Source: Macrostomum lignano (taxonomy: Eukaryota). From it: a stretch of 64,000 bases of DNA. Positions within the stretch are counted from its first letter, which is position 1; the number at the start of each line of letters is the position of its first letter. The notes below the pieces were generated by a model. The model made no database searches and was not told the DNA's origin. It saw only the letters and a program-made list of their open reading frames with translations. The position numbers and the translations under genes were made by a program. The DNA lies in NCBI GenBank assembly GCA_002269645.1, contig NIVC01000467.1, positions 1-64,000 on the forward strand, given 5' to 3'. Shown here piece by piece: positions 2,951 through 59,300 of the stretch.

Positions 2951-3048
2951 GAGAAGCGCTCTCTTTAGATGATATGATATGATATGATAATCCCTATTCA
3001 AATCTGAGCCCTACAAATGCTTAATCTCCCCTCCCAACACCCCTGCAG

Positions 3049-15670: not shown

Positions 15671-17785
15671 CTAGTAGCAGACATTCACGTTCCTGACGCC
15701 TTCGCCGCAGTCGAAAGCGTTCAAAACTTCGGGCAGGCTGCTGAACGCGTCGTTGGCAAGCTTGACCACATCAGAGGTAGCCGGAGCAGTGGCTCTAGCA
15801 GCAGTCACCGACTTGCGACAAGTCAGCTGACTCACCCCGATGACAGTCGATCGCGTGACCGCCGGAGCAGTGCTCTGATCGACAGCTCGAATAGCAACAC
15901 GAAGGCTAAGCAAGCTGGCCAGCTTCTTCTGCTCTGGATCGTTGGTGGATGTAGAGCTGACCGGACATCCAGCGGTGAGGTTAACCAGAAGGTCCGCTGG
16001 CAGTCTCTGCTTCTCCACCGCCGAAATTCCGCGAAGCGTTTCGTAGGCAATCAGGAAGTTCATAGCCGGATCGGCGGGCAGGGCGGCCCAATAAAACTCA
16101 ATAGGATACGGAAATCTGTTCCAATCCGGCTCAGTGTCCTTGATGAAGCTGGGAGGCTGATAGCCGAACCGATTTGACGCTTTATCGGTGAGAAACTCGG
16201 CCTGTGAAGAAGCCGCCAACCTGTAGACGCTGCGTCTGCGCTCTCGCATTGCGTCCAGCAGATTGACAAGGTATGGATTGTCGGCTGGGAGTGCCAGCTT
16301 GCCGTAGACAGCTCGCATGCGCTCCGGGCTGCGCGTCCACCGTGGCAGGTCGGCGACATCCGTCGGTGCCACTCCAAGCACAGACCGGATCCGTTCAACA
16401 GCCGACCTGTGCTTGCCTTCCAATCCGAGCTGATCAACAAACAATCTGGCAGTCGGATGCGGATACAGGCTTAGCACGGTTGCTAGGCAGACTTCCGGCT
16501 TACCTGAAGGCGATGATAATTGACTCTGAGCCCCAGCCCGAGTGTCAACAGGGGCAGCAGCGTCCAGCGAGCCAAGCAGATGCGGTCGTAGCGCCGTCAG
16601 GGCGTTGATGAAGGCATAGCCAATCAACGTGTCCGGGTCCTGCCGGGCCGCCAGCTCCAGCAGGCGTCGGACTCTGCCGCGACCGCGAAGGCAAAGTCTG
16701 TCGAATTGTCCCGGGCCCGCCTGCAAGTCTGGAAGCAGCGTACCGTAGAAATTTTGCCAGCCAGTGGCTCCGTTCGGAAAGAGGCTGGCTACCTCGTCGA
16801 AGCTGATGTAGCTTCTATTGGCGCTGTCAGCTTCCCCATTGTCAATCAGCTTCCAGACTTCTTCGTTAAGGCTTACAATTTTCTCCACAATGACGAACGG
16901 CAGTCCGCGACCGAGAAACTTGAAGGTCGCCTCCACGGAGCGAGTCACCCGGTCGCGACTGCCGCGAGGCAGCCGAGGCGTTGACGGACGAAGGCACAGC
17001 GACAGCGAGCGCTTGTTCGACGATGCTCCAGCATCCCGACTGTCATTCGGCTCGACGTCCAGCATCACGGGCAGATCCTGCAGTGCAAACTGGGCCAGCA
17101 CTTTCTCTGGCGAATGCTTGAAGCCCCACAAGATGGACTCGGAGCCGAACACGGACATTGGCGTGAACCGACCGAGGTCGGTGAATGCTGCTATCAATTC
17201 GTCGGGTTTGAGCCGGTCGAAGGCGAGACAGGATCGAGTCAGGTTGCTCACCGCCAGAGCCCAGGAGGGCAGCGTCGGCTGTCGATCAATGCCTAGCAAC
17301 AGCAGCTCCACCAGAGAGTCCTGGATCCGGAGCTGGGCCTGACGAATCGAGCTGGTCTCAGTCTCGACAGCTCGACCGTTCCAGCGCAAGCTGACAGCCT
17401 GCTGGAAGCGACCGCACGAATATTTGTAGAGGTTCACGCACGGACTGGAGCCGGCTGAGACAAAGGACGCCGATTCAGGCGGCAGCAGAGGCGGCTGTTG
17501 CTGAAGCAGTTGACGCTGGCAGGCGGCGGCCACCTTGGAAGTTCGATCGCTGGCGCTGGTCGAGAAGGTTCTGCCGCCGGCCTGGTGTCCCGCATCGATG
17601 TAGAAGTAGAACAGACAGAGCACGGCAAATCCGCTGGCTACCAGGACCAGCAGCACCGTCAGTACCCAGGTGCTGGCCCTACAGCTGGAAGAGCTGGCGT
17701 TGTCAGGCTTACCGGATGCGTCACTTGTCTCCATGCGGATGTTAGTGTCATCGGATGTTTCACTTTCCAGCTGTTTCTGCTTCTG

Positions 17786-17826
<41 letters not shown>

Positions 17827-18055
17827 TTTGAATCAGAAGAGATTCGGTCTCAGTCTCCATGGCTGCAGCTTCACCGTTTCTGGGCGAAGCTGATCCAGGC
17901 TTGTAAATGAGGTTGGACATGCCTTTTTTATAGTCGGTAAATTTCTTCACTCTACTTTCAGTTTTCTTTTCAATAACTAGACTGTCTTGGCCATAAGTTT
18001 CACTTCGAAGCGAATTTTTATCAACTTCTCCACATTGGAGACCTCGGCATCTCAT
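15671..18055 (-). CDS. Neprilysin/endothelin-converting enzyme (M13)-like type II membrane protein, predicted catalytically inactive, single exon, 794 aa
   Basis: Has a TM helix WVLTVLLVLVASGFAVLCLFYFYI, the M13 N-terminal motif SPCVNLYKYSCGRF (cf. PCxDFYxYACGxW) and a C-terminal SLPEVLNAFDC...C (cf. NxxEFxxAFxC). The HExxH position reads IAYETLRG. Confidence 0.8.
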
Positions 18056-32057: not shown

Positions 32058-33830
<1,773 letters not shown>

Positions 33831-34239
33831 TTATTAAGAACCCCAATTAGACTGGCTACCTACTTATATCAGAGCATATAGAACCTGAATCCATTATGTG
33901 TAGCAATTTTAAGCGTATGATTACTTAATGTTGTAATAATATGATACATAATAATGACAGGTCATGCACAAGAGGGACCCAGACTCAGCTCTCTATTCAC
34001 CAGTGAGCCGAGCTGAGAGATCAGGTTACTCACTGGTCGAGTTGAAGGCGAAGTTGAAGTGAAAATTCAATTTCATAAATACATACCTTGCCACTTTGTC
34101 TACAGCAGGTGCTGATTTAATTAGCTATAGTTATAGAATTATAGTTTCAAATTTTTTTAATGTCCAAGCGTTCTTTATTGACATAATTTGGCAGGAAATA
34201 ACTTGTTCTGTGCGTGGCATGAGATATGAATCATGTGTG

Positions 34240-35209
34240 TGTAGTGAGCCGCTAGTTTATTGTTAGGCGTCGCCCTTGTCAGCCGCTCCCTTGCCCTCCC
34301 TTTGGGTTGCTGTCTGCCGCTGGTCAGCTTCCCGTGTCCCTTTCCGCCCTGCTGCGTCTCCGTTCTCAGCCCTCAGTCTCTCGACTGTGGGCTGTCTCTG
34401 TTTCGCTTCCATCCTGTTTTCCTCTGTCATGTGAGCAAGTCACATGACAGACTCTGCGTTCTTCAAGTCCTAAAGTGCAGTAAACATGTTTACTGCACTC
34501 GTTGGCCCTGTTTACCGGGTGAGTCACGTGCTTTCGGACCCCTCCCTTCTCTAAGGAGAGGAGTGACTCATGTTGCTAAAAATAGCAACTGAGTCACAGC
34601 CGCGTGTACTCTGGCCGGGGACCTCAAGTGACGTCAGTTCTAAAAATAGAACAAGTCACGAGGTCTTCCGCACGCTTCTACCCTGCCCAAGACTCTCGAG
34701 TGACGTCAGTTCTAAAAATAGAACAAGTCACGAGGTCTGGAGCGTGGGAATTTCCCGGCTATAAATAGGAGCCCTCTCCCCCTTGTTTCCGTCAAGGAGT
34801 CTTCCTTCTGTTCAACCTCGAGTTCTACGTCCGCGTGTGACTGAGTCCCGAGTGTCCGAATCTTTGCGCACATTGATTCTGTTCCTATTGCTCCGACTGA
34901 GACCTGACCAAAACCAACCCAAGTTTACGAGAGGCTAACTCCGCCCTCCCTGTACCATCCAAGCCCGGCAGGTGCTGCTGACGAGACGCCTTATACGTGA
35001 GCTGCAAATCTGCACGTCGTGCTGTGTTCGTTGACTTCATTATTTCGTTCCGACGGGAAGCTCACCTCACCGAAGGCCGAGACCTGAAGGAACTGGTGGC
35101 AGCACTACCTACGCTACTGAGAAAGTTGAGAGAACTTCCCACTGAAGAGGCCCGAGTCTGAAGGTAATCCGCAAGGGCCGAAACCGGGAAGAAACCCCAT
35201 TGTACTTCA
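34240..35209 (+). repeat. 5' LTR (970 bp)
   Basis: Starts TGTAGTGAGCC and ends GTACTTCA; no difference from 43584-44553 seen by eye; TATAAATA at 34760. Confidence 0.97.
34423..34767 (+). promoter_or_regulatory. LTR U3 enhancer/promoter with FoxO-, AP-1-, CRE-, MEF2- and NF-kB-type motifs and a TATA box
   Basis: TGTTTAC/GTAAACA (34474-34499 palindrome, 34509); TGASTCA (34520, 34564, 34590); TGACGTCA (34629, 34701); CTAAAAATAG (34576, 34640, 34712); GGGAATTTCCC (34746); TATAAATA (34760). Confidence 0.7.
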
Positions 35210-35210
35210 C

Positions 35211-35228
35211 TGGTGGCAGCGGTGGGAT
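35211..35228 (+). other. Primer binding site complementary to the tRNA-Leu 3' end
   Basis: TGGTGGCAGCGGTGGGAT, 1 nt after the LTR, is complementary to ...ATCCCACCGCTGCCA-CCA, the 3' end of metazoan tRNA-Leu(AAG/UAG type). Confidence 0.9.
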
Positions 35229-35299
35229 CCGACTACGACACACCCAAGCCAACCGCTCTTTCGAGAACGACTTCGGCCAGCGACTACGACGAGTTCAAT

Positions 35300-36472
35300 A
35301 TGTTCAACGAACGAGACGAGAGCCGGTGCAGCAGCCGGCTGGATCAGCACATCAGCAGTTCGAGGCCTGCGGCAGCGGACGCCGCAGCAGCAGCAGCGAT
35401 CAACGACCTTGGTCAGCAGCCAACGCCGAGGCGAGGTGCCAGAAGCGACGTGTCCGACGACCCGCCAGACGAGCTTCTGCAAGGCCTGGACAACATCGGC
35501 CGGAACATCACGCACCAGGACGTGAGGACCATGATGGCAGCTCTGCAGCAGCAGATGGAGCGGCCTGTGAGTAAACAAGTTAAGATTGTGAAGTATACTC
35601 CAAGTCAGGACATTTATGTCTGGCTTGCCGCGTTCGAGCAGCGTTGCGAGATGGAGCGCATAGTCGACCCGTTCGAGATGAAGCAACACCTCATCGCGAG
35701 TCTTGATTTGGCTACTGCGTATCCTTCCTTGCTTAGTATGAATCTTCCGCGTTTCGCCAGCTACGAGGAGGTCAAGCAGCGTCTGATTGAGCGATTTGCC
35801 CGTCATGGTGGTGCTGATGAGTACAGAGAGCTGTTTAGGCGTCGTCAACAAGGCAAGAATGAGTCAGCAGAAGAGTTTGCTGACGCCCTGAGAACTCTTG
35901 GTGAACGTGCGTATCCTCGAATGCACCCCGAAGACCGCGAGAAGGAGATTGCTGATCAATTTCTTGCTGGTATCCGGACGACTCCAGACCTGCGTGAACG
36001 GCTGTACTGGGTCCGCCCAAATAATCTTCTTGCTGCGATTCGAGAACTACGACGACTAGAAGGCGCCAAAGAATTGGCGCAGCGAACCGCTCAACCCCCG
36101 GTTAGGATGTTGGACGGGGAGCAGGACGGCGACCCGAAGCCCGACGTCACCGCCCAAGCCTTGCTAACTCTAACCGACTTGATCGAGAAGCAGCAGCGAC
36201 TGCTTGATCACCTGGTGCAGCGTGACCAACAGCAGAAGAACAGCCCGCCGGCGAAGACTACAATCTGCTACGGCTGCGGACAGCCCGGTCACCGCAGTGC
36301 CCAGTGCCCGATGCGCCAGAACCAGGGAAACGGCCAGGCGGAGAGCGACAACGGCACCGCCCTCCGCGAGGTCCAAGCCCAGGCTACTTGGCAGACTCCG
36401 AGAGGTCACCAGAAGAAGAGGATGTCGGCTGTGCAGGCGCCAATGCCCAGTCCGACAGGCGCTCGTCAGTAA
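35300..36472 (+). CDS. gag: Retrotransposon Gag with CCHC zinc knuckle
   Basis: First in-frame ATG at 35300 (the frame is open from the PBS). Contains retrotransposon-gag-like WLAAFEQRC...QGKNESAEEFADALRTL and the knuckle CYGCGQPGHRSAQC. Confidence 0.9.
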   Translation: MFNERDESRCSSRLDQHISSSRPAAADAAAAAAINDLGQQPTPRRGARSDVSDDPPDELLQGLDNIGRNITHQDVRTMMAALQQQMERPVSKQVKIVKYTPSQDIYVWLAAFEQRCEMERIVDPFEMKQHLIASLDLATAYPSLLSMNLPRFASYEEVKQRLIERFARHGGADEYRELFRRRQQGKNESAEEFADALRTLGERAYPRMHPEDREKEIADQFLAGIRTTPDLRERLYWVRPNNLLAAIRELRRLEGAKELAQRTAQPPVRMLDGEQDGDPKPDVTAQALLTLTDLIEKQQRLLDHLVQRDQQQKNSPPAKTTICYGCGQPGHRSAQCPMRQNQGNGQAESDNGTALREVQAQATWQTPRGHQKKRMSAVQAPMPSPTGARQ

Positions 36473-39400
36473 GTGACGCGGAGTGCGGAGGTTTCGTGGA
36501 CACCTCCCCGAATCAAAAAATCCATGCGCGTGAGGCCGATCCGTACGTCACAGGTCGAGTTGCGACTCGAGAGGTGCCTTTCTTGCTTGACAGCGGCAGC
36601 CGGAAAAACTTTCTTGGTTCGTCAACCTGGGCCGCTATTAGACGTCGGATGCCTCGTTGTATTATATCGCATGCTATTCCCGATTGCGTAACTATGTATG
36701 ATGGGACGCAGCTCCCACTTGCTTGTAAGGTGACCATCCCAGTGGAGTTTGGTGATGTCGTCGCGGACACCGAATTCCTCGTCACGGTCTCCGATTGTGA
36801 AAATTTGCTTGGCGTATCGTTTATGCGAGAGCACTGCCAGAACTTGGACTTCGCTCAAGGAATGCTAACGTTCAACAATGGCACGTGCATCCCTGTTCGT
36901 TATTCGCGTCGCGAGCTTCAAACCTGCCGAGTGTACACCTCCGAGAAGTGCACCCTGCCGCCTAGAAGTTCAGCGCTGCTTCCCGTCAGATTGGATGACG
37001 GCCATTTCGAGAATCGAGGATCGCCATCAATCGTCGAGCTGGTTAAGTCGAGGCTGCATCCCAGTTGCAACGTTCTGGAAGCAGCGCCTGCTCTGATGAC
37101 GATGCCTGAAGGTCGCGGCTATCTTGAGGTCGTCAACACCGCCGACAGCGAGGTGTTCCTGCAAGCCGGTATCCGTGTAGGTGTTGCGACGCCACTCCGA
37201 ACTGCCGACCTGATGTACTTGAGCGAGACGCCCGAACCTGAAGTGCGACACCTCCCGAAGAACTCTGAAGAGTCCAGCACAGCATGGCTAGATGAAGTCG
37301 AGATCAACAGCGAATTGTCCAAAGAACAACATCAAAGAGTGCGAGATCTACTAGTCGAATGTCAAGCGGCCTTCTCCAAGCACTCGCTAGACGCCGGCCT
37401 GACTCACCTGGTGACCCACGAGATCATCTTGAAGGACCGGACACCAGTCGCGCTACCACCGCGCCGAATCCCGCCTCATCTGAAGGACAAACTCGACGCC
37501 CTGCTAGACGAGATGCTGGCGAAGCACATCATTCGCCCTGCCTACTCGAGCTACAATTCGCCAATGCTCATCGTGCCCAAGAAGGACGGCAATATCCGAC
37601 TAGTCCACGACTTCAGAGCTCTCAACGATAGGTGCGTGTATCACCCGTATCCGCTCCCGCACATCCAGGAAACCTTCGCGAAGCTTCGTGGTGCTCAGTG
37701 GTATTCCAGCTTGACCTTGCTCAAGGATTCTGGCAGATCCCGCTGCGTGACTGCGACCAGCACTTGACGGCATTCTCAGTGATCGACCGCGGCCAATTCT
37801 GTTTCAACGTTCTACCGATGGGTCTCCACGACAGTCCCGGCAGCTTTCAGCGTTGCATCAATAAGCTCCTGGACGGCCTGACGCCAAAGACTGCGCTTGG
37901 CTATATGGACGACATCGTGGTGCACTCAGTGACTTTCGAGGAACAGCTGGATAACTTGCGAACTGTACTCCAGCGCATCATCGCAGCCAACCTCAAAGTG
38001 AAACCGAAGAAGTGTCATTTGTTCCTCAAGGAGCTGCATTATTTAGGTCACGTCGTGACTCCCGACGGCCTGAAGACCTGTGAGGACAAGATTGCGCAGA
38101 TCCGTGATTGGCCCGTGCCACAGTCCGTTACTCAACTGAGACAATTCCTAGGCCTCGCCAATTACTACCACAAGTTTGTCGACGGCTACGCTGGAGTGGC
38201 TGCGCCGCTGCATGCCCTGACGCGAAAGGACATTGGCAGCCTGCGGCAGCATTGGACTCCCGAGCATCAGTTAGCGTTCGACACTTTGAAGAAGAAATTG
38301 TGTTCTACTGAAGTTCTCGCTCTGCCTGAATTTAATTCTGATCCTGCTGTGAAGTTTGTCCTCGACACGGATGCCTCTGATATTCGAATAGGCGCTTGCC
38401 TTGGACAACTGCAATCCGACGGCGTCGAACGTCCAATTGCATTCTTTAGCCGTAAACTTCGCGATCCTGAGAAGCGCTACACGGTCACGAAGAAAGAGCT
38501 GCTTGCAATTGTGGACGCTATGCGACATTTCCGTCATTACTTAATCGGCAAGAAGTTTGAAGTTCGATCCGATCATCGGGCCTTACTGTGGTTACTGAAC
38601 CAAACTCAGGCCACAGGTATTTTAGGCCGCTGGATCGAGCGCCTAAGCGAGTTCCGCTTCCAGCTCAACCACCGCAAAGGCAAGGACCACGCCAACGCTG
38701 ATGCCCTGTCAAGAAGACCGGAGGCGCCGCCGATCTCCTTCGAGCATGGCCGACTGCTAGAGCAACCTGGTTCTACAGCCCGACCCGGTGACGACCACGA
38801 CCTGGAACCGGATTTGGACCCGACACCCGAGGCCACTGCCAGAGCAGCCCTCCAGAAGACAGTCCACTCTCGCTGCTTGGAGGCCGAGACTGACCTGGAC
38901 GAAGACCTGGAAGCCACCGCGCCAGCAGCCTTCCAGCACGACGCCCACCGATGCAGTCAACGCCTGGAGTTCGGCCTGGACGACAACTCAGAGGCCACTG
39001 TGACAACAGCCCTCTGCAACGATGCCCATGCCGCCCACTGCAATTTGGAGACCAACCTGGACGAAGACCTTGAGGCCACTGTGGACACAGACCTCCTTGA
39101 CGACGCCCAAGACTACAGGTCTCGGACTCTGGAGACGCCCACGGACCAAGATTCAAAGGCCACCGCACCAGCAGCCCTTCTGATGACGGCCCGCAACGCA
39201 ACTCCAGGCAAGCAATTTAACTACAACCCTTCCGAGCCTTTCGCTGAGATTTCTCGCCGTGTTGACAGAGGCCAGAATCTCGCGCCAGCTGCAAGGTCGA
39301 AGCTCTGTCCCCCGGGCCGACAGACAGCTGCTCATCGCCTGTGCGGAAAGTCGAGTCCCCCTTTGCGACACCGCCCAGTGCAGGAGAAGACTCACCCAAT

Positions 39401-42400
39401 TTTGACGACGACTGAGCCGACGGCTACGGCTGCCAGCGACGAGGCGTGCTTCACGTGTTGCGTCCCGCCCTACAGCCAAGAGTCGCCTGGGCTATGCAGT
39501 GGAGGCATGCGCGCTGCTCCATCTGCGGAATCTTCTGTCATGAGAGCGATAAAGAGAACTTCGATTCGAGATCAACGGACGTACGCCGACGTTGTGAGAC
39601 AAAGTCCCTCGGAGCGACCTAATCCTGACGCCGACAAGACGGTGCCGTGTGATCGACCTGGAGCCATTAAAGCGGAGACTGCGGGAGTCATGACCCCTCA
39701 GCCATGCCGCGCCGTGCTCTCTGATTTTCTGAAGCTGCCGATGACTCGCCAACAGTTCGTTGACGCCCAACGCGCTGACCGAGCCATCAGCTACGTGCTC
39801 AACCTGGTCGAGAACGAAGCCCCGAAGCCTGAGTTCGACGCCCGGTTGCGACTGACTAAGGAGCAGCGGAATCTGCTCGGATACTACGAGAACCTGCAGG
39901 AGGACAACGGCCTGCTGCTGATTGACCTGACTGATGGACAGCAGCCGCCAAAGGTTGTTCTGCCTGAGGCCCTTGACGCCCAGGTGCTCCAGGAGCTCCA
40001 CAGTTCGCCACTGTGTGGACACCTCGGCGAGACGAAGACGTTACTGCGGCTACGAGAACGGTTCTGGAGACCCGGATTAGCCCGTGCTACCAAGACCTTC
40101 ATCAGTAAGTGCCGCACTTGCCTTGAAAGTAAATCGCGACGGCGAGAGAGAGTTCCGGTCCAGAGCTTCCCAGTTTGCGAAGTTCTGGGTAGAATCCACT
40201 GTGATGTAGTAGGACCAATCGCGCAGAAGAGCAAGAGCGGTAACCGCTACATCCTGACCTTGTGCGATGCGACGTCGAAGTATCCATTCGCCTACCCGAT
40301 GAGAAACCAGAAAGCCAAAACAGTCATCAAGCTTCTGCAGGAGCGCTTCATCCCTGAGTTCGGTGTACCATGCTGGATCCACACTGACCAAGGCACCAAC
40401 TTCACCGGCTCGGCCTTCAAGAAGTTCTGCGACCTGTTTGGCATTCGGCATACGACAACAACACCGTACAATCCAGCTTCCAATGGACAAGTGAGAACCT
40501 CAACAAGCAGCTGAAGAGTGTCCTCACCTGTCTGCTCGAGCGCAACCACAACGACTGGGACACCTTCCTCCCGGCCTGTCTGATGGCTCTCCGCTCCAGC
40601 GTGCACCCGGTGACCGGCTTCACGCCTCACTACCTGGTGTTCGGCCGTGACTTCCGACTCCCGATCGACAACGCGCTGAAGAAGCTGCCCGAGTACGCCG
40701 ACCTGCCCGACTACGTCAAGGACTTCCAACGTCGCCTGGACGAGGCGACTGAGCTAGCCAAGGAGCGCCTGCATCTGCACCAGCAACTGCGAGACGAGCA
40801 CTATTCGAACCTGCCCGTCGCCAAGAAGCTTCAACCCGGTGATCTGGTCTTCCTCAACAATCCGGTGCTTGAACCGGACGAGGCGGCGAAGTTTCATCGC
40901 CCGCGCAAAGCACTGTACGAAGTCGTCGAGCCTAAGGGCGAGGTTGTCTACAAGATTCGACGGAGACTGCCCAACCCGAGAGCTAGACGAGACGAACTAG
41001 TCGTCCATCGCCGGAACCTTCTGCTCGTGCCTGACGCTGACTATACGAGGACTTCCGATCCTGAAGTCGACAAGCCGAAGAGGCGTCGGCGACCGCCCGA
41101 CGTCCCCGACGGCGCAGGACCCGCGACCCTGACGCCGATCCCCGAGGACGACCAGGACGACCCCGACGATGATGATGATGACGGCTACGACGCAAGGCCG
41201 GCCTTCCGATGGCACTTCCGGCCTTTGGCGATCCCGGAGGTGCAGCCAGGAGGTGGACCGGTCACGACACCAGCGAACCAGGCAAGTGCACTTCGGCGTG
41301 AGCCAGTGCCGTATGGTGAATGTCATTTGCATGAGCCTGTTCTTGATGCGTCTACGCCTGTTGTTTCTTTTCCGCCCGTTTCTGCTCCCGCCCCCAGTGC
41401 TGCTTTATCTGTGGTCCAGACCCCTGGGCCGTCGCTATGCACCACTCCGGTGGAAGCGTCATTAGGAACTGTAGATGCCGGTAGGCCGGCTAGGAACCGT
41501 AGGCAGCCTGAGAGGCTGATTATTAATCCTAGGGCTAAAAGTTACGTTAGCCGCACCGCCCGCATCCGCGCACAAACTAAAACGAATTTCAGCGCAGAAA
41601 TGCAACCGCGCCGTATTGCTAAGCGCACTGAGCGCTCGCCGCCTACTGAGGCTCGCCTCAATCGACCCCGCTACTATGTCGAACCGGGGCCTCCGATCGG
41701 CGCAGCGGCCGGCCAGCTCGAATCTGGCGAGCACCGAGAGGCTCATCGCATTCCTCCCCAGCTCCGGCTCGGCTTCCGCCAGGACTGCGGAGCTACGCCG
41801 CTGCCGGAGGAGAACCATCGCCCGTCAAGGAGGCGCAGACGTCGACGCCGACCGGGGCACAACCGGACCGCCGGTGCCGAGGGGACGCCCTCGGAGAACC
41901 CGGCCGTCGTCCGTCGTCTAGCGCCAACCTCATCAGGAGGACAGGCGGCTGCGTCAACAGCCAGCACGGAAGCTGTCGCCCAAGGAATCGCGTCAATCCG
42001 ACGCCAGGTCGAGGCCGACCAAGCACGCGAGGCCGCTGAAACCAGCCGGGAGCGACCCAAGCCCGCCACGACCGACACCAAGCCTGAAGCCAAGGGGCAG
42101 CGCCGACCGCAAACTGCCGCTCCCGTCTGCATCGACCTGACGGGTTTGGACTCACCAACGGCCGAGCCGATGCCTAAGACTCAACCAGCCCCGGTCAACA
42201 AAGAGGCGGTCGCCGAAGCCCTGGCCGCCGTGCGACATCGGCTGTCACCCAGACCGCCAACGCCACCTTCAACGTCCAAGCCGAAGCACCGAGACCCGCG
42301 GCCGGAGCCGGCCGCCGGAGGCGCCACGACATGGGCGGAGGATGATGCCGCCCCAATTTTTCTTTGTAGGGTCGCCGGCCAGGACCACCATCTGGAGCCA

Positions 42401-42958
42401 GCCTCACCGCCGCGCGACGACCAGACGTGGCTGCCCACGGTCCCTGAGACCGAGCCCCCGGCTGAACCGAGAACCACCGAGGCCGCCTGCCAGACGGAAG
42501 ACCATCCCGCCGAGGCGGCTGTCCTCAACGACCTGGCTGCGGAACTGAGGCAGGCCTTGGCCCCCAGCGACACGGCCCCGCCGCCGCCGCCTAACTCGCC
42601 CGAGCCCGACGACGCGGAAGAAGACCCAGCGCCTGCAGACCCCTCGCCAGCCGTGCAAGCCGCCGTCAACCGCTACATTGAGGCGGTCTACTTTATTGCA
42701 CAGCAACTGACGGCCGCGGCTCAGTTAAATCTCCTGCCGAACCTCTCGGACTGGCCGCGATGGGCATGCCTCCGCGCTCTTACTGACGATGATCGCCAGA
42801 GGCTGCTGAACGAGGCAGCCCAACTCGCCGAGCCCACGCTCAGACGACCACCGCACCCCGAGACAGCGCGCGTTGTAGCTCAGCTAATCGCTGGGCAAAT
42901 TGCTGGGCGCACACCGGCAGTGCCCGAGATCATAATGAACTGCGGCAGGGCGGACTGA
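36304..42958 (+). CDS. pol: Pol polyprotein (protease, RT, RNase H, integrase, long C-terminal extension), interrupted by two 1-nt deletions at about 37713 and 40493
   Basis: PR FLLDSG; RT RLVHDFRALN...LPHI, DLAQGFWQI, YMDD; RH DTDASD...ELLAI...DHRAL...NADALSR; IN HSSPLCGH...CRTC, CDVVGP, TDQGTNF...NGQV[E]; GPY/F-like domain. The three ORF-track segments join by restoring one G at each break. Confidence 0.92.
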
Positions 42959-43571: not shown

Positions 43572-43583
43572 GAACGGGGAGAG
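43572..43583 (+). other. Polypurine tract
   Basis: GAACGGGGAGAG immediately precedes the 3' LTR. Confidence 0.85.
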
Positions 43584-44553
43584 TGTAGTGAGCCGCTAGT
43601 TTATTGTTAGGCGTCGCCCTTGTCAGCCGCTCCCTTGCCCTCCCTTTGGGTTGCTGTCTGCCGCTGGTCAGCTTCCCGTGTCCCTTTCCGCCCTGCTGCG
43701 TCTCCGTTCTCAGCCCTCAGTCTCTCGACTGTGGGCTGTCTCTGTTTCGCTTCCATCCTGTTTTCCTCTGTCATGTGAGCAAGTCACATGACAGACTCTG
43801 CGTTCTTCAAGTCCTAAAGTGCAGTAAACATGTTTACTGCACTCGTTGGCCCTGTTTACCGGGTGAGTCACGTGCTTTCGGACCCCTCCCTTCTCTAAGG
43901 AGAGGAGTGACTCATGTTGCTAAAAATAGCAACTGAGTCACAGCCGCGTGTACTCTGGCCGGGGACCTCAAGTGACGTCAGTTCTAAAAATAGAACAAGT
44001 CACGAGGTCTTCCGCACGCTTCTACCCTGCCCAAGACTCTCGAGTGACGTCAGTTCTAAAAATAGAACAAGTCACGAGGTCTGGAGCGTGGGAATTTCCC
44101 GGCTATAAATAGGAGCCCTCTCCCCCTTGTTTCCGTCAAGGAGTCTTCCTTCTGTTCAACCTCGAGTTCTACGTCCGCGTGTGACTGAGTCCCGAGTGTC
44201 CGAATCTTTGCGCACATTGATTCTGTTCCTATTGCTCCGACTGAGACCTGACCAAAACCAACCCAAGTTTACGAGAGGCTAACTCCGCCCTCCCTGTACC
44301 ATCCAAGCCCGGCAGGTGCTGCTGACGAGACGCCTTATACGTGAGCTGCAAATCTGCACGTCGTGCTGTGTTCGTTGACTTCATTATTTCGTTCCGACGG
44401 GAAGCTCACCTCACCGAAGGCCGAGACCTGAAGGAACTGGTGGCAGCACTACCTACGCTACTGAGAAAGTTGAGAGAACTTCCCACTGAAGAGGCCCGAG
44501 TCTGAAGGTAATCCGCAAGGGCCGAAACCGGGAAGAAACCCCATTGTACTTCA
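43584..44553 (+). repeat. 3' LTR (970 bp)
   Basis: Same sequence as 34240-35209. Confidence 0.97.
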
Positions 44554-44621
44554 TGTGTCTTGAGAATAGTTCTTTCAAGACATCTTTTTATTGTGCACAT
44601 TTTCTCATAAAGTGGGATCTT

Positions 44622-45177
44622 GAAATGTCTGAGAATAGAGATCTGTTGTCAGATGATTGAGATCTGTTGTCAGATGATTTAGATCTGTTGTCAGATGATT
44701 GAGATCTGTTATCAGATGATTTAGATCTGTTGTCAGATGATTGAGATCTGTTGTCAGATGATTTAGATCTGTTGTCAGATGATTGAGATCTGTTGTCAGA
44801 TGATTTAGATCTGTTGTCAGATGATTGAGATCTGTTGTCAGATGATTTAGGTCTGTTGTCAGATGATTGAGATCTGTTGTCAGATGATTGAGATCTGTTG
44901 TCAGATGATTGAGATCTGTTGTCAGATGATTGAGATCTGTTGTCAGATGATTGAGATCTGTTGTCAGATGATTTAGATCTGTTGTCAGATGATTTAGATC
45001 TGTTGTCAGATGATTTAGATCTGTTGTCAGATGATTTAGATCTGTTGTCAGATGATTTAGATCTGTTGTCAGATGATTTAGATCTGTTGTCAGATGATTT
45101 AGATCTGTTGTCAGATGATTTAGATCTGTTGTCAGATGATTTAGATCTGTTGTCAGATGATTTAGATCTGTTGTCAG
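44622..45177. repeat. 21-bp minisatellite GATCTGTTGTCAGATGATTTA
   Basis: About 26 copies, with two variant blocks (TTGA/TTTA). Confidence 0.95.
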
Positions 45178-52717: not shown

Positions 52718-54556
52718 ATGATCAACCTGATCGACCTACTGGAGACCCAGCAGTTGCCAGCGGAGTCAGTGACTCCAGCTGCCTATCGAGTACTTGGCGG
52801 ACCTCTGGCTAGCGTGCTGGCCTGTGCTGCAGGTACTCTGCTAATCTGCTACCTATTCGGCGAGAGACAAAGGTGAGATTAAGCTCAACTGCTAATTCTA
52901 TCTATAGGATATGCTCCATAAGAACTAATATAAAGCTAGAATGCTATTTACTTGACACTTGAAACAACTTCAAATTGCAGATCTGACTCCGAGCCGCCGC
53001 TGGTGCCGGGCTCCCGCCTGTTCGGCAACGGGCCGCAGTTCCAAGCCAACGCCGTGCAGTTCCTGCTCGACGCCCGCCGAAAATTCGGCAGCCTGTTCAC
53101 CATCAGATTTCCCGGCCACCACATCCACATGCTGATGAACCCGCACAGCATCGGGGAGTTCAGCCGGGCTCGCAGTCTCGACTTCGCTCCCATCCACAAG
53201 CAGGTCACCACCAACGTGTTCAGCTTCGAAATGCCAGACTCTCATCGGATGCTCCGCGATGCCTCCAAGGCTGCCCGGGCCGCCCTGAAGGACGATGTCT
53301 TCCGCTACCAGGCCTTTGTTGACGAAGGCTTCGACTCCAAACTGGCCGGCCTGGCCGAGGGACAGTGGCGCACGGAGATGCTGGACGACTTTCTGGCCGA
53401 TACGCAGTTCCGCGCCATCTTCAACTCCATCTTTGGCCGCTCGGACGAGCACCAGTTTAACCATCGCAGCGCCCGGGGACTGTTTGCCGACATCCACGCC
53501 TCTTTCAACTATGTCTGGCTCGGCTTCCCCGTGTGGATGTTCCCCAAGACCAAGAAGGCTTGGCAAACGGTCCACAGCGCCCACCCGGCGCCTCAGGAGC
53601 TTCTCGACCGCGACGATTGCAGCGTGTACATCAAGAGCGTGATGAGCACCATGATGGAGAAGGAGCAACCGGTAGCCAGCATGGTCGGACACAACATGGT
53701 CTACCTTCACGTGAACTACAACACGAAGAAGGCCACTTATTGGGCAATTAACAATCTGCTGAAGGACCGTCAGGCTTACGCCGCTCTGCAAAGTGAAATC
53801 GACGATGCAATCAACGCCAAGGTTGGCGACTCGAGCGAAGTTGCCGAATTCAGCAGCGATGAGATCGACCGCCTGCCACTGCTTGGTAAGCTGAGCCTCC
53901 GAAACCTTATGGAAATTCATTGCCAGCCTTTATTAAAATCTCCTACAAGTTTAATTAATTACAAATTCTCTTCACACTTACAGACAGCTTCATCAAGGAG
54001 ACTTTCCGCCTGTCATCTGGCGTCTTTATGATTCGTGCGGTCACGGAGGACACTGTGCTGGAAGTCGACGGTCGTAGCTACCTGTTGCGCAAGGGCGACA
54101 AAGCGGCCGTGTACCCGCCAGCTCTGCACCGCGATCCCGAGATGTACGATAGCCCCAATGTAAGCAACTACTATGCCAGTCACCTGATTTTCCATCCAAT
54201 TAAAAATTTGATTCACTTTATAACTTGAACTAACCAACGCTCTCCACTCTCTTTGTATCGTGTAGGATTTCCGACACGACAGATTCATTGACAACGAAGT
54301 GACCTACGAGGGCAAACGAGTTAGCAAGCCAATTCTGCCCTACGGCGTGCTGTGCCCCGGTCAGCGGCTGTCCCTCATCCAATTCAAGTGGTTCATGTTC
54401 GCCATGCTGGCCCGTTTCCAGTTCCGAGCTGACGAGGGCGGCCAGACAGCCGAGTACGACTTCAACAGCTACGGACACGAGATTCTGCCACCAGTCAGCG
54501 ATATCCCATTCAACTATGCGGCTAGGGACCTGGCAGTACAGCTACAGCTCTGCTAA
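52718..54556 (+). CDS. Cytochrome P450, clan 7 (CYP7/CYP8/CYP39-like), 508 aa; exons 52718-52872, 52981-53885, 53984-54159, 54266-54556
   Basis: N-terminal anchor; EPPLVPG...FGNGPQF...FTI; I-helix NTKKATYW (cf. CYP7A ANTIPATFW); K-helix KETFRLSSG; PALHRDPEMY; DRFI; heme Cys in PYGVLCPGQ. All introns are GT-AG with consistent phases, total 1527 nt. Confidence 0.92.
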
Positions 54557-56387
54557 GCCTCACTAATACGACCACCTAGCAACCAAATTTACCTCTTGGA
54601 ACATCTTCGCTGTCGTAATTCTTACATAAGACACTTCCGAATAAAAAGTGTAGATGCGAGGCCTCGAAACGCATTTATACTTTTATTGATCGCTTCTTGT
54701 CGAACGTGTTTTTCTGTTGCTTTTTGGTAATTATAGTCGCTGTGTTACAATTATTGCGCTCGCTCGCTATTCGAATTGTTTACAATTTTACTGAAAGCGA
54801 AAATGCTTGCCTTATTGACAGCCATAATAATAACTCGCTTCCTGAGAATCTTTATGTGCTTTATACTGCTGTAATCTGCCAGCATGCTTGACCACTCCCT
54901 GAGTAGACCCATTGTACACCATGCAATGTATATCAACTTACTGTTATAGTCAGTCACAATGCCACATTGGATTCAGTTCGCTTTCGCTCGCCTGTTAAAT
55001 AATTCAAACATTTACAATAACAATGATGATGATAATGATTGCTATTTAAAACAAATATATCTATGATTATGTCTAGTCAAATTCTGAACACAGCATAAAC
55101 ACTTTTAAAACAGAATTTACTTTATTTGTTTCTTTCAACACAATAGTCTGCAAGCCCACGGCCCGCGAAGCCTCTCTATCCGGCCCTCAGGTCCTTTGAA
55201 ACTTCACAATAGCAATCCGGTCCGCTTAAGGCTTGTCTCTTCTCAGCTCCCTTCTCTCCTCTCTCCCCCTTTTTTTCTCTATCCTCTCATCTTCTCTCTC
55301 TCTCTATCTTTTTATCTTCTTTCTCTTCTCTCCTCGATTTCCTCTCTCACCTGGCCATTAGCTAGGATCTTTATCTGGGCCTTTAGGCCAAACATTTTGC
55401 TCACCCCAGTTGTAACACAATAATTTTATTTTATTTAATTGTAAAAAATACAGCAACCTGTTCATGAACTTTAAACGAGTAGGAAAGCGGAACCAAACAA
55501 ATTCAAAATTGGTATGTTCTATAAATATTATTATTATTGTGGTTATTATTCATAAAAGCCCCGCAAAGTACGTGAGGTCACAGGGACAAAATTTTTCTAA
55601 AAATCAAGCAGCTAAAAGTTTAAAGTTGGTCCCTAAGCTCTGATTCTAAAATAGAAAATTTCTTCTGGGACCCCACAAGATCTGTGGGGATCGGGTGTTT
55701 TTGTTATTGCGAGCTAACAGTTGCACATTTCGGCACTTACTGGTATGTGAGGGTTTATGGCCCAAAAAACATCAGCAGGTTTTTCTCTTCTGACTTGCGA
55801 GCTGGTGATCATCAATTTGAAAATTTACTTTATCACGCACTTCCGTATAATTTCTGCTTCTAAAAGAGCCGAATGAACTGTATTGCTAGATTGAATTATG
55901 AAAACTAAACACCTTAACAAAATCTGCGCAGTTCATCTACATGTGATTCTAAAACGATTCAACTTCAACATTCACGTGATACTGCTTGGATCGGCGTGTT
56001 TCCTTGCTTTCCTGCCTTGCCGCTTTTAGCTAGTTCGTAGAAAGGTTAAGAGGAAGTAAAGGATACAAAAAGACCGAATCAGATCACGTGACTCGCGGCC
56101 CGTACCTCCTTTCGCCCAACGAGCTAATGTACTTCAAGCTAATTTAAGCTTAGCTTTCCACGGGAATTCCCAGGGTGTTAAAAAAGCATCGGTGTACAAA
56201 GTGAACAGATATGTTTTCTTACAGCCTCACATTTAAACTTCTCGTTTAGGTTAATATTAAAGCATTCAGTAAACAGGTAGCCGTTACGCAAAAACTTGTT
56301 TTACTGACATGCTCGTTAATTTTAAAGAGAGCTGTTTTTTTACTTGGAGTCAAAGATTTAATTTTTTATTTATCAGGGAGGGTGTAG

Positions 56388-59300
56388 ATCAAGGAGGGTG
56401 TAGATCAGGGAGAGTGTAGATCAGGGAGGGTGTAGATCAGGGAGGGTGTAGATCAGGGAGGGTGTAGATCAGGGAGAGTGTAGATCAGAGAGGTGTAGAT
56501 CAGGGAGGGTGTAGATCAGGGAGGGTGTAGATCAGGGAGAGTGTAGATCAGGGAGAGTGTAGATCAAGGGAGAGTGTAGATCAGCAGGGTGTAGATCAGG
56601 GAGGGTGTAGATCAGGGAGAGTGTAGATCAGGGAGGGTGTAGATCAGAGAGGTGTAGATCTGGGAGAGTGTAGATCAGAAGGGTGTAGATCAGGGAGAGT
56701 GTAGATCAAGGAGGGTGTAGATCAGGGAGGGTGTAGATCAGAGAGGTGTAGATCTGGGAGAGTGTAGATCAGCAGGGTGTAGATCAGGGAGAGTGTAGAT
56801 CAGAGAGGTGTAGATCTGGGAGAGTGTAGATCAGCAGGGTGTAGATCAGGGAGAGTGTAGATCAAGGAGGGTGTAGATCAGGGAGAGTGTAGATCAGAGA
56901 GGTGTAGATCAGGGAGGGTGTAGATCAGGGAGGGTGTAGATCAGGGAGAGTGTAGATCAGGGAGAGTGTAGATCAAGGGAGAGTGTAGATCAGCAGGGTG
57001 TAGATCAGGGAGAGTGTAGATCAGGGAGAGTGTAGATCAGGGAGGGTGTAGATCAGAGAGGTGTAGATCTGGGAGAGTGTAGATCAGCAGGGTGTAGATC
57101 AGGGAGAGTGTAGATCAAGGAGGGTGTAGATCAGGGAGGGTGTAGATCAGAGAGGTGTAGATCTGGGAGAGTGTAGATCAGCAGGGTGTAGATCAGGGAG
57201 AGTGTAGATCAGAGAGGTGTAGATCTGGGAGAGTGTAGATCAGCAGGGTGTAGATCAGGGAGAGTGTAGATCAAGGAGGGTGTAGATCAGGGAGAGTGTA
57301 GATCAAGAGAGAGTGTAGATAAGCAGGGTGTAGATCTGGGAGAGTGTAGATCAAGGACGGTGTAGATCAAGGGAGAGTGTAGATCAATGGAGAATGTAGA
57401 TCAAGGGAGAGTGTAGATCAAGGGAGAGTGTAGATCAAGGAGGGTGTAGATCAGAGAGGTGTAGATCTGGGAGAGTGTAGATCAGCAGGGTGTAGATCAG
57501 GGAGAGTGTAGATCAGGGAGAGTGTAGATCAGGGAGAGTGTAGATCAAGGAGGGTGTAGATCAGAGAGGTGTAGATCTGGGAGAGTGTAGATCAGCAGGG
57601 TGTAGATCAGGGAGAGTGTAGATCAAGGGAGAGTGTAGATCAAGGGAGAGTGTAGATCAGGGAGGGTGTAGATCAGGGAGGGTGTAGATCAGGGAGAGTG
57701 TAGATCAATGGAGAATGTAGATCAAGGGAGAGTGTAGATCAAGGGAGAGTGTAGATCAGGGAGAGTGTAGATCAGGGAGAGTGTAGATCAGGGAGAGTGT
57801 AGATCAGAGAGATGTAGATCTGGGAGAGTGTAGATCAAGGACGGTGTAGATCAAGGGAGAGTGTAGATCAATGGAGAATGTAGATCAAGGGAGAGTGTAG
57901 ATCAAGGGAGAGTGTAGATCAGGGAGAATGTAGATCAAGGGAGAGTGTAGATCAGGGAGAGTGTAGATCAGGGAGAGTGTAGATCAAGGGAGAGTGTAGA
58001 TCAGGGAGGGTGTAGATCAGGGAGGGTGTAGATCAGGGAGGGTGTAGATCAAGGAGGGTGTAGATCAGGGAGAGTGTAGATCAGGGAGAGTGTAGATCAG
58101 GGAGAGTGTAGATCAGGGAGAGTGTAGATCAGGGAGAGTGTAGATCAAGGGAGAGTGTAGATCAGCAGGGTGTAGATCAGGGAGGGTGTAGATCAGGGAG
58201 AGTGTAGATCAGGGAGGGTGTAGATCAGAGAGGTGTAGATCTGGGAGAGTGTAGATCAGAAGGGTGTAGATCAGGGAGAGTGTAGATCAAGGAGGGTGTA
58301 GATCAGGGAGGGTGTAGATCAGAGAGGTGTAGATCTGGGAGAGTGTAGATTAGCAGGGTGTAGATCAGGGAGAGTGTAGATCAGAGAGGTGTAGATCTGG
58401 GAGAGTGTAGATCAGCAGGGTGTAGATCAGGGAGAGTGTAGATCAAGGAGGGTGTAGATCAGGGAGAGTGTAGATCAGAGAGGTGTAGATCAGGGAGGGT
58501 GTAGATCAGGGAGGGTGTAGATCAGGGAGAGTGTAGATCAGGGAGAGTGTAGATCAAGGGAGAGTGTAGATCAGCAGGGTGTAGATCAGGGAGAGTGTAG
58601 ATCAGGGAGAGTGTAGATCAGGGAGGGTGTAGATCAGAGAGGTGTAGATCTGGGAGAGTGTAGATCAGCAGGGTGTAGATCAGGGAGAGTGTAGATCAAG
58701 GAGGGTGTAGATCAGGGAGGGTGTAGATCAGAGAGGTGTAGATCTGGGAGAGTGTAGATCAGCAGGGTGTAGATCAGGGAGAGTGTAGATCAGAGAGGTG
58801 TAGATCTGGGAGAGTGTAGATCAGCAGGGTGTAGATCAGGGAGAGTGTAGATCAAGGAGGGTGTAGATCAGGGAGAGTGTAGATCAAGAGAGAGTGTAGA
58901 TCAGCAGGGTGTAGATCTGGGAGAGTGTAGATCAAGGACGGTGTAGATCAAGGGAGAGTGTAGATCAATGGAGAATGTAGATCAAGGGAGAGTGTAGATC
59001 AAGGGAGAGTGTAGATCAAGGAGGGTGTAGATCAGAGAGGTGTAGATCTGGGAGAGTGTAGATCAGCAGGGTGTAGATCAGGGAGAGTGTAGATCAGGGA
59101 GAGTGTAGATCAGGGAGAGTGTAGATCAAGGAGGGTGTAGATCAGAGAGGTGTAGATCTGGGAGAGTGTAGATCAGCAGGGTGTAGATCAGGGAGAGTGT
59201 AGATCAAGGGAGAGTGTAGATCAAGGGAGAGTGTAGATCAGGGAGGGTGTAGATCAGGGAGGGTGTAGATCAGGGAGAGTGTAGATCAATGGAGAATGTA

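What the first reader, a model, noticed from the sequence alone, without database searches (positions are those of the whole stretch)
34474..34767. LTR U3 is a dense stress/wound-response-type enhancer cassette
Seen in under 300 bp: three FoxO-type TGTTTAC/GTAAACA, three AP-1 TGASTCA, an E-box, two full CRE TGACGTCA, three perfect MEF2 CTAAAAATAG and one NF-kB-type GGGAATTTCCC directly before the TATA box. A ~40-bp CRE+MEF2 module is duplicated at 72-bp spacing. Established: these are the consensus sites of immediate-early and stress-responsive factors. Inference: the element is tuned to fire on injury or starvation and, with two copies per insertion, could distribute wound-responsive enhancers. 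It would also be a ready-made inducible promoter.
Basis: partly seen in the sequence, partly recalled or inferred. Interest (0 to 1): 0.8.

Follow-up and report, generated by a model that had tools for sequence, protein, structure and literature searches.

The report
Flatworm retrotransposon LTR enhancer-promoter cassette
The 294-bp stretch is the promoter/enhancer part (U3) of a young Ty3/gypsy-type retrotransposon of the flatworm Macrostomum lignano, truly packed with transcription-factor motifs that survive LTR turnover, but nothing yet shows that it responds to wounds or stress.

Summary
Observation confirmed. Every motif sits where stated: 14 matches against 0.21 expected from shuffles, and 12 against 0.16 after collapsing the duplication. 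The region lies in the 5' LTR (34240-35209) of a 10.3-kb Ty3/Mdg4 (gypsy) element of Macrostomum lignano. Its two LTRs are 100% identical, it has a 4-bp TSD, and it encodes gag and a broken pol but no env.

Eight independent copies show patchy conservation. The motif blocks, and especially the two 44-bp CRE+MEF2 modules, persist while the spacer and flanking LTR segments have turned over. A distant relative keeps only the MEF2-type palindrome with GAGTCAC, the E-box, one forkhead site, two hairpin palindromes and the TATA box.

A U3 enhancer-promoter with a duplicated module is well founded and is classical LTR architecture. The "wound/starvation-tuned" reading rests on motif names alone.
- There is no canonical heat-shock element, which is the proven stress switch of other LTR families in this species.
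- The "NF-kB" site is limited to one subfamily, and planarians lack a clear NF-kB.
- Two "FoxO" sites are the halves of one palindrome whose symmetry is conserved, not its forkhead core.

No expression data could be reached. It is an ordinary kind of element, locally useful.

The parts
34236..34239 (.). Target-site duplication TGTG (5' copy); the 3' copy is at 44554-44557
   Evidence: Other copies also have 4-bp TSDs: CTAC, TTAT, CTTA, CCAA.
34240..35209 (+). 5' LTR, 970 bp, TG...CA
   Evidence: Self-BLAST gives 100% identity to 43584-44553. Ends read.
34423..34451 (+). Palindrome P1 (12-nt arms TCTGTCATGTGA / TCACATGACAGA, 5-nt loop). It lies upstream of the finding and is conserved in all subfamilies.
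   Evidence: L007 keeps it with compensatory outer pairs.
34474..34499 (+). Palindrome P2, 26 nt and perfect. It contains 'FoxO' sites 1 and 2 (GTAAACA|TGTTTAC).
   Evidence: In L007 it is replaced by a different palindrome without a forkhead core.
34509..34515 (+). Forkhead core TGTTTAC (site 3); TGTTTAT in L007
34520..34530 (+). TRE TGAGTCA overlapping the E-box CACGTG. The TRE occurs only in subfamily A. The E-box is kept in B and L007 and lost in L004/L005.
34563..34597 (+). Near-symmetric composite: GTGACTCA, then the palindromic MEF2-type site GTTGCTAAAAATAGCAAC, then TGAGTCAC. The MEF2 site plus GAGTCAC is the most deeply conserved piece (26 of 27 in L007).
34623..34666 (+). Enhancer module copy 1: CRE TGACGTCA, MEF2-type GTTCTAAAAATAGAAC and AAGTCACGAGGTCT
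34695..34738 (+). Enhancer module copy 2, 43 of 44 identical to copy 1, 72 bp downstream
   Evidence: The 28-bp spacer 34667-34694 matches subfamily B at only about 54%.
34742..34756 (+). GCGTGGGAATTTCCC: a kB/RHD-type palindrome (34746-34756) overlapping an EGR-like GCGTGGG and the CSL core GTGGGAA. Only GCGTGGG is shared with subfamily B.
   Evidence: The EGR and CSL consensus readings are from my own knowledge.
34759..34768 (+). TATA box CTATAAATAG, which also fits YTAWWWWTAR
   Evidence: The TATAAAT core is kept in L007.
34788..34797 (+). Predicted transcription start zone (about 30-34 nt after the TATA box; inferred, not shown). Identity between subfamilies A and B falls from 93% to 56% right after it.
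   Evidence: Inference
34961..35135 (+). Conserved R/U5 block. It includes a PBS-like 10-mer TGGTGGCAGC at 35094-35103.
35211..35229 (+). Primer-binding site TGGTGGCAGCGGTGGGATC; the primer tRNA was not identified
   Evidence: No tRNA gene was found in the window or loci.
35300..36472 (+). gag (390 codons from the first ATG), open, with a CCHC zinc knuckle and a weak Retrotrans_gag match
36226..42958 (+). pol: PR (weak), RT, RNase H, a 436-aa linker, IN and a long Pro-rich tail. In this copy it is broken by two frameshifts relative to the continuous 2206-aa pol of copy L006. There are no in-frame stops in the aligned parts and there is no env.
43572..43583 (+). Polypurine tract GAACGGGGAGAG
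43584..44553 (+). 3' LTR. An identical copy of the cassette lies at 43818-44111.

Best explanation
The region is the enhancer-promoter (U3) of a young, recently amplified Ty3/Mdg4 (gypsy) LTR retrotransposon family of Macrostomum lignano.

Host factors would bind a dense array of sites:
- bZIP factors: two full CREs, up to three TREs, and repeated GTGAC half-sites
- a MADS/MEF2-type factor: three palindromic CTAAAAATAG sites plus the TATA box itself
- a forkhead protein
- a bHLH(-ZIP) protein at CACGTG

Together they would recruit RNA polymerase II to the TATA box at 34760 and start the genomic RNA about 30 nt downstream. A 72-bp tandem duplication, of which a 44-bp CRE+MEF2 core is retained, doubles the main module, as in the classical retroviral enhancer repeats.

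Shown here:
- the LTR anatomy
- the motif excess
- the family-specific occurrence of the cassette
- the persistence of the motif blocks across subfamilies

Inferred:
- which proteins bind
- where transcription starts
- that the array is signal-responsive (MAPK or cAMP/Ca type) rather than simply strong
For: - Motif excess: 14 observed against 0.21 expected, and unique within the window. The GTGAC half-site occurs 7 times against 0.85 expected.
- Element anatomy: identical 970-bp LTRs, TG..CA ends, 4-bp TSD, PBS, PPT, gag with CCHC, and RT-RH-IN order.
- Host identified by 97%-identical M. lignano proteins.
- Nine independent insertions. LTR pairs are 99.9-100% identical wherever both LTRs were recovered, except in the distant L007 copy at 97.9%.
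- Variable columns: 5 of 111 in motif positions against 30 of 183 in non-motif positions (p=0.0025). The region is 11.9% variable against 32% for the rest of the LTR.
- The modules are identical in subfamilies A and B, while the spacer between them matches at about 54%.
- In L007 (internal identity 85%, U3 otherwise unalignable) P1, TGTTTAT, CACGTG, the MEF2 palindrome with GAGTCAC and the TATA box survive.
- Two other M. lignano LTR families have essentially none of these motifs.
- LTRs of this species are proven to work as autonomous, motif-dependent promoters in another family (PMC12801592).
Against: - No transcript, TSS or binding data were reachable.
- Over the whole region, A-B divergence (7%) equals the near-neutral rate in gag (5.6-9.5% at third positions). 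The A/B footprint therefore comes mainly from hyper-divergent spacers, not from hyper-conserved motifs. Concerted evolution of the two repeats could also keep the modules alike within a copy.
- Only three lineages were compared.
- There is no canonical poly(A) signal downstream of the TATA box, so the U3/R/U5 borders are uncertain.
- Several sites vary between subfamilies: TRE 1, the kB-like site and the E-box.
Confidence: 0.75

Rival explanations
1. One reading: the cassette is specifically tuned to fire on injury, starvation or other stress. Immediate-early factors (AP-1, CREB/ATF, possibly EGR, FoxO) would switch the element on, coupling its transcription to wounding and regeneration, and LTR copies would spread wound-responsive enhancers.
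For: - There are two full CREs and up to three TREs.
- CRE, TRE and Egr motifs are the injury-responsive motifs in Hydra chromatin (PMC8049744).
- GCGTGGG next to the TATA box is EGR-like, and more so in subfamily B (consensus from my own knowledge).
- LTR families of this species have repeatedly captured stress elements (PMC12801592). That paper also notes that regeneration from somatic stem cells offers a route into the germline.
Against: - The case rests on motif names only.
- There is no HSE and no SRE/CArG.
- In the published heat experiment, strong induction was confined to HSE-bearing families.
- The kB-like site is subfamily-specific, and NF-kB is doubtful in flatworms.
- Two of the three Fox sites may be a structural palindrome.
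- MEF2 and CACGTG are not stress-specific.
- CRE and TRE are also common in strong constitutive viral enhancers.
Confidence: 0.2
2. It is a tissue- or cell-type-specific or constitutive promoter rather than an inducible one. The array would give strong basal transcription in particular cells, for example stem cells or germline (useful to the element) or muscle and neurons (typical MEF2/CREB territory).
For: - There are three to four MEF2-type sites with an E-box and bZIP sites.
- The most deeply conserved site is the MEF2-type palindrome.
- The identical LTRs of many copies imply recent heritable transposition, which needs expression in germline or stem cells.
Against: - The E-box is CACGTG, not the myogenic CAGCTG type.
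- There are no expression data.
- This reading is compatible with inducibility and does not exclude it.
Confidence: 0.35
3. This rival applies only to 34423-34499. The two long palindromes, including 'FoxO' sites 1 and 2, would act through their symmetry rather than as forkhead sites. They could be RNA hairpins in the 3' UTR (the U3 of the 3' LTR is transcribed), DNA cruciforms, or interchangeable dimer sites.
For: - Both remain hairpin-capable in L007 with changed sequence. P1 shows CG to UA. P2 shows GC to AU, AU to GC and GC to GU, and its forkhead core is lost.
- The RNA fold is -34 kcal/mol with z=-4.96.
- Palindromes are moderately enriched overall (P about 0.01-0.04).
Against: - All compensatory changes come from one lineage contrast.
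- Subfamily A copies L004-L006 carry unpaired changes in the 5' arm of P1 while the 3' arm is invariant.
- Templated mutation can perfect palindromes without selection.
- There is no Rfam match.
- Dimeric factors also prefer palindromes.
Confidence: 0.3
4. The motif cluster is a chance or hitch-hiking feature with no regulatory role.
For: The motifs were picked after reading the sequence. The A-B divergence of the region as a whole is near neutral.
Against: - 14 hits against 0.21 expected, with no shuffle exceeding 3.
- The position is immediately upstream of a TATA box in an LTR.
- Islands survive in L007 where the rest of U3 is unalignable.
- The motifs are absent from other LTR families.
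Confidence: 0.03

Closest known systems
Retroviral U3 enhancers with tandem repeats (e.g. the murine leukaemia virus 72/75-bp repeats; the HTLV-1 21-bp CRE repeats) - from my own knowledge
   Same: A dense, composite array of transcription-factor sites in U3 just upstream of a TATA box. One module is tandemly duplicated with a period of about 70 bp, and CRE-type bZIP sites are the core.
   Different: The host is a flatworm and the element is a gypsy-type retrotransposon without env. The partner sites are MEF2-type palindromes. No binding or activity data exist.
HSE-bearing heat-inducible LTR families of M. lignano (Mlig-id115|Mag, Mlig-id55|CsRN1, Mlig-id38|Gmr1/Osvaldo; PMC12801592)
   Same: Same species and same superfamily. 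The LTR acts as a self-contained promoter that has captured host response elements near a TATA box.
   Different: Those families carry 1-4 canonical HSEs and are induced more than 250-fold by heat. This LTR has no HSE at all and instead carries CRE, TRE and MEF2 sites. Whether it is one of the paper's 137 families could not be resolved, because the supplement is not held.
ONSEN (Ty1/copia, Arabidopsis), as discussed in PMC12801592
   Same: The concept is the same: an LTR retrotransposon hijacking a host stress pathway through cis elements in the LTR.
   Different: Different superfamily, kingdom and motif. Induction is shown there and not here.
Immediate-early / injury-responsive cis-regulatory modules (CRE, TRE, Egr, MEF2, SRF; PMC8049744, PMC6140108)
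   Same: The motif vocabulary overlaps: CRE, TRE and MEF2, plus an EGR-like core.
   Different: There is no SRE/CArG, the module sits in a mobile element, and responsiveness is untested.

Membership tests
Ty3/Mdg4 (gypsy) LTR retrotransposon | Long terminal direct repeats ending TG...CA | tested here: met
   970-bp LTRs, 100% identical, TGTAGT...ACTTCA
Ty3/Mdg4 (gypsy) LTR retrotransposon | Short target-site duplication | tested here: met
   4 bp (TGTG). Four other copies also have 4-bp TSDs.
Ty3/Mdg4 (gypsy) LTR retrotransposon | PBS next to the 5' LTR and a polypurine tract before the 3' LTR | tested here: met
   TGGTGGCAGCGGTGGGATC at 35211 and GAACGGGGAGAG at 43572. The primer tRNA was not identified.
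Ty3/Mdg4 (gypsy) LTR retrotransposon | gag with a CCHC knuckle; pol in the order PR-RT-RNase H-IN | tested here: met
   Pfam matches: zf-CCHC, RVT_1, RT_RNaseH, Integrase_H2C2, rve, and a weak Asp_protease_2
Errantivirus / endogenous retrovirus (env-bearing) | An env-like third gene | tested here: not met
   The fourth open frame begins with the integrase C-terminal region. In copy L006 it is part of one continuous 2206-aa pol.
LTR U3 enhancer-promoter with repeated enhancer module | A cluster of transcription-factor sites upstream of a TATA box inside the LTR, with a tandem repeat of a module | tested here: met
LTR U3 enhancer-promoter with repeated enhancer module | Transcription starts downstream of the TATA box, which defines the U3/R border | not testable with these tools
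   No transcript data were reachable. RAMPAGE data exist for the species (PMC5730564).
Stress-inducible LTR promoter of the HSE type (ONSEN; the M. lignano HSE families) | A canonical HSE, nGAAnnTTCnnGAAn, in the LTR | tested here: not met
   None on either strand, and not even a GAAnnTTC dimer
Stress-inducible LTR promoter of the HSE type (ONSEN; the M. lignano HSE families) | Transcript induction on heat | not testable with these tools
   Family-level tables of PMC12801592 are not held
Immediate-early / wound-response enhancer | CRE and TRE consensus sites | tested here: met
   2 CREs and 3 TREs. TRE 1 occurs only in subfamily A.
Immediate-early / wound-response enhancer | SRE/CArG box and a full EGR site | tested here: not met
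   No CCWWWWWWGG. The EGR-like match is only partial: GCGTGGGAA in A and GCGTGGGTG in B.
Immediate-early / wound-response enhancer | Rapid induction after injury | not testable with these tools
   No expression data
NF-kB-responsive element | A GGGRNWYYCC site that is conserved, and a cognate factor in the host | tested here: inconclusive
   The site is perfect in subfamily A but absent in B and in L007. Planarians have only divergent RHD proteins and no clear NF-kB (PMC13563047). The M. lignano repertoire was not examined.

The most novel reading that the evidence does not exclude
A flatworm retrotransposon family has built an immediate-early-type enhancer (CRE, TRE, MEF2 and an EGR-like core) and is switched on by wounding. 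Its transcription would then be coupled to regeneration, when somatic stem cells can rebuild the germline, and new LTR copies would seed injury-responsive enhancers near host genes.
Probability: 0.15. Interest if true: 0.7.

Novelty: new member of a known kind. Interest (0 to 1): 0.33.

Why it matters
- It gives a fully dissected example of a non-HSE LTR promoter in a transgenic-capable regeneration model. The one study in this species that looked for cis-regulatory elements in LTRs searched only for heat-shock elements.
- The natural subfamily variants offer a ready comparative series for reading existing expression data. Some lack TRE 1 and the kB-like site, some lack the E-box, and one lacks both CRE+MEF2 modules.
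- If the family did respond to injury, it would link transposon activity to regeneration. If not, it remains a typical strong LTR enhancer.

Tried and rejected
- Env reading of the fourth ORF: rejected. It is the integrase C-terminus plus a tail.
- Search for transcript-derived contigs through gag: only two remote hits and none from this family.
- Pattern scans of metagenome and viral collections with the conserved MEF2+GAGTCAC piece and with the CRE+MEF2 module: no match.
- tRNA search to name the PBS primer: none in the window or in 10 loci.
- Rfam over the element: nothing.
- PDB sequence search of the RH-IN linker and the pol tail: nothing.
- Supplementary tables of PMC12801592, needed to identify the family and its heat response: not held.
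- First NF-kB/flatworm literature search: uninformative.
- Bacterial-type promoter/terminator scan of the LTR: irrelevant hits only.
- Reading the A-versus-B footprint as strong purifying selection: toned down after the neutral-rate check.
- Chance explanation of the motif cluster: rejected.

Full report
**1. Observation**

Reading 34200-35100 and exact pattern counts confirm every item of the finding:
- forkhead cores at 34480, 34487 and 34509
- TGASTCA at 34520, 34564 and 34590
- CACGTG at 34525
- TGACGTCA at 34629 and 34701
- CTAAAAATAG at 34576, 34640 and 34712
- GGGAATTTCCC at 34746-34756
- TATAAATA at 34760

The repeated module is 44 bp (34623-34666 and 34695-34738), matches at 43 of 44 positions, and the copies are 72 bp apart.

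In 5000 dinucleotide-preserving shuffles the six motif classes together give 0.21 hits on average, with a maximum of 3. The observed count is 14. With one repeat removed it is 12 against 0.16. No other 294-bp window of the 64 kb approaches this, apart from the second LTR.

An unbiased word count shows that the most repeated 6-mer is AGTCAC/GTGACT. GTGAC occurs 7 times against 0.85 expected. The array is therefore dominated by bZIP-type half-sites.

**2. What it sits in**

Self-BLAST finds a 970-bp direct repeat, 34240-35209 and 43584-44553, that is 100% identical. Other features of the element:
- TG...CA ends and a 4-bp target duplication TGTG
- a PBS-like TGGTGGCAGCGGTGGGATC one base after the 5' LTR
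- a polypurine tract before the 3' LTR
- gag with a CCHC knuckle, and pol in the order RT-RNase H-integrase with a weak protease match upstream (Pfam)

This is a Ty3/Mdg4 (gypsy) element. The fourth long ORF is not an env. It begins with the integrase C-terminal region and carries a weak Integrase_p58_C match. In copy L006 the whole of pol is one 2206-aa frame that is -1 relative to gag.

In the window copy gag is open. Pol carries two frameshifts relative to L006 and has no in-frame stops in the aligned parts. Every other copy examined also has at least one break (counts):
- L006: one stop in gag
- L001: three pol frameshifts
- L002: one pol frameshift, plus one frameshift and one stop in gag
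- L003: two pol frameshifts
- L005: three frameshifts and two stops in pol
- L007: five frameshifts and one stop in pol, and two frameshifts in gag

Indel errors of long-read assemblies could mimic some of these frameshifts.

The host is Macrostomum lignano. The best pol hit is 97% identical, and all close hits come from that species.

**3. Relatives**

Eight loci from assembly GCA_002269645.1 carry the same family.
- Subfamily A: L004, L005, L006 and L008, with LTRs about 93% identical to the window.
- Subfamily B: L001-L003, about 83% identical.
- A distant member, L007: 85% identical internally, with the LTR alignable only in two blocks.

No flanks are shared, so these are independent insertions. 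LTR pairs within copies are 99.9-100% identical, except in L007 at 97.9%. The family was therefore active very recently.

**4. Conservation pattern**

Identity between the window and subfamily B, by segment:

| Segment | Identity |
|---|---|
| 5' U3 | 70% |
| 34413-34797 | 93-97% |
| 34798-34960 | 56% |
| 34961-35135 | 90% |
| 3' end | 73% |

Within the finding region, 5 of 111 motif columns vary against 30 of 183 non-motif columns (Fisher p=0.0025). The two 44-bp modules are the same in A and B, while the 28-bp spacer between them matches at only about 54%. The spacer ends still resemble the sequences flanking the modules. This suggests an old 72-bp duplication of which only the core has been kept.

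There is a caveat. Near-neutral divergence between the same copies is 5.6-9.5% (third positions of unchanged gag codons), about the same as the region overall (7%). The A/B contrast therefore comes mainly from unusually fast turnover of the spacers and flanks, which the motif blocks escaped. It does not come from extra conservation of the blocks. Homogenisation between the repeats could also contribute.

The deeper contrast with L007 is more telling, because most of its U3 is unalignable there (36-46% identity). L007 nevertheless keeps the following:
- palindrome P1
- TGTTTAT
- TCACGTGC
- TGTTGCTAAAAATAGCAAC followed by GAGTCAC (26 of 27 positions)
- the TATAAAT box

L007 has no CRE+MEF2 modules and no kB-like site, so those are later additions.

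Site turnover among close copies:
- TRE 1 and the kB-like palindrome exist only in subfamily A.
- The E-box is lost in L004 and L005.

Two other M. lignano families (pol 56-59% identical; L009, L010) have AT-rich LTRs with essentially none of these motifs. The cassette is therefore family-specific.

**5. Palindromes**

The first two forkhead cores are the halves of a 26-nt perfect palindrome, P2 (34474-34499). A second palindrome, P1 (34423-34451), lies just upstream of the finding.

In L007 both stay hairpin-capable with altered sequence. P1 has one compensatory pair. P2 has two compensatory pairs and one G-U pair, and its forkhead core is replaced. As RNA the pair folds at -34 kcal/mol with z=-4.96.

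All of these changes come from one lineage, and some subfamily A copies carry unpaired changes in P1. This is therefore a live rival for that sub-region only.

TRE 2 and TRE 3 are inverted repeats around the palindromic MEF2 site, forming a near-symmetric unit of about 35 bp.

**6. Interpretation**

The best reading is an LTR enhancer-promoter driven mainly by bZIP and MADS/MEF2-type factors, with forkhead and bHLH inputs and a duplicated core module. This is the classical architecture of retroviral U3 enhancers (from my own knowledge).

The wound/stress reading is only a possibility. In its favour:
- CRE, TRE and Egr motifs are the injury-responsive motifs in Hydra chromatin (PMC8049744).
- CREB, AP-1, MEF2 and Egr are the standard stimulus-regulated factors (PMC6140108).

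Against it:
- In M. lignano itself the demonstrated stress switch of LTRs is the canonical heat-shock element. It is present in 6 of 137 families, 4 of which are induced more than 250-fold. HSE mutation abolished induction in the one family tested, the top-induced Mlig-id115|Mag (PMC12801592).
- This LTR has no HSE, not even a dimer.
- The NF-kB label is doubtful. The palindrome is subfamily-specific, and planarians have only divergent RHD proteins and no clear NF-kB (PMC13563047).
- The invariant core GCGTGGG can be read as EGR-like or as the CSL core GTGGGAA (from my own knowledge).

No expression evidence could be obtained.

There is no canonical poly(A) signal after the TATA box. The only variants are TATAAA itself and AAGAAA near the LTR end. 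The U3/R/U5 borders therefore remain inferred.

**7. Novelty**

Dense, partly duplicated transcription-factor arrays in U3 are a known kind of thing, and LTR promoters with captured response elements have been published for this very species. What is new is a specific, well-footprinted CRE/TRE/MEF2 cassette in one young family, together with natural variants. Interest is modest unless induction by injury is shown.

Noticed in passing
window 35094-35103 and 35211-35220; L009 7823/8026; L010 8393/8472: The first 10 nt of the primer-binding site (TGGTGGCAGC) also occur about 115 nt upstream, inside U5. That internal copy is invariant in all nine copies, including the distant L007. The same 10-mer occurs both inside and just after the LTR in two other M. 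lignano families.
   Followed up: partly
window 35211-35229; L001-L008 just after the 5' LTR: There are two PBS variants among copies: TGGTGGCAGCGGTGGGAT and TGGTGACGCAGCGGTGAGAT. L002 and L008 carry tandem duplications of a PBS/leader segment of about 64 bp.
   Followed up: partly
window 34423-34451: A 12-nt-arm palindrome (TCTGTCATGTGA...TCACATGACAGA) lies just upstream of the finding. It is conserved in all subfamilies and has compensatory outer pairs in L007.
   Followed up: partly
window 38655-39962 and about 41000-42955: Pol is unusually long (2206 aa in L006). It has a 436-aa RNase H-integrase linker and a proline-rich tail of about 700 aa, neither with any Pfam or PDB match. Subfamily B elements are about 1.4 kb shorter in the tail.
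   Followed up: partly
window 34798-34960: Identity between subfamilies A and B falls abruptly from 93% to 56% right after the predicted start site and recovers to 90% at 34961. Such a mosaic could mark recombination at R during reverse transcription.
   Followed up: no
window 32123-33765 and 44639-45177: The element is flanked by minisatellite arrays: 11/23-bp units upstream and a 21-bp unit downstream. Copy L001 also sits inside a satellite of about 240 bp.
   Followed up: no
window 56372-61911: A 5.5-kb array of a 16-bp unit (about 346 copies) has a higher-order period of about 1581 bp.
   Followed up: no
window 4056-4516: Degenerate AACCCTAA-type units form an interstitial array resembling telomere repeats.
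   Followed up: no
window 3017-4003 (+), 15671-18055 (-), 52952-54031 (+): Host gene fragments are present: a RasGAP domain, a peptidase M13 domain and a cytochrome P450 domain.
   Followed up: no
L010 7738-24077: A different gypsy family is arranged as a tandem LTR-internal-LTR-internal-LTR array with a period of 7898 bp.
   Followed up: no
L001 3020-21321; L004 1348-21281: Two family copies lie antisense inside the span of predicted host genes, one with a DUF3689 domain and one cadherin-like.
   Followed up: no
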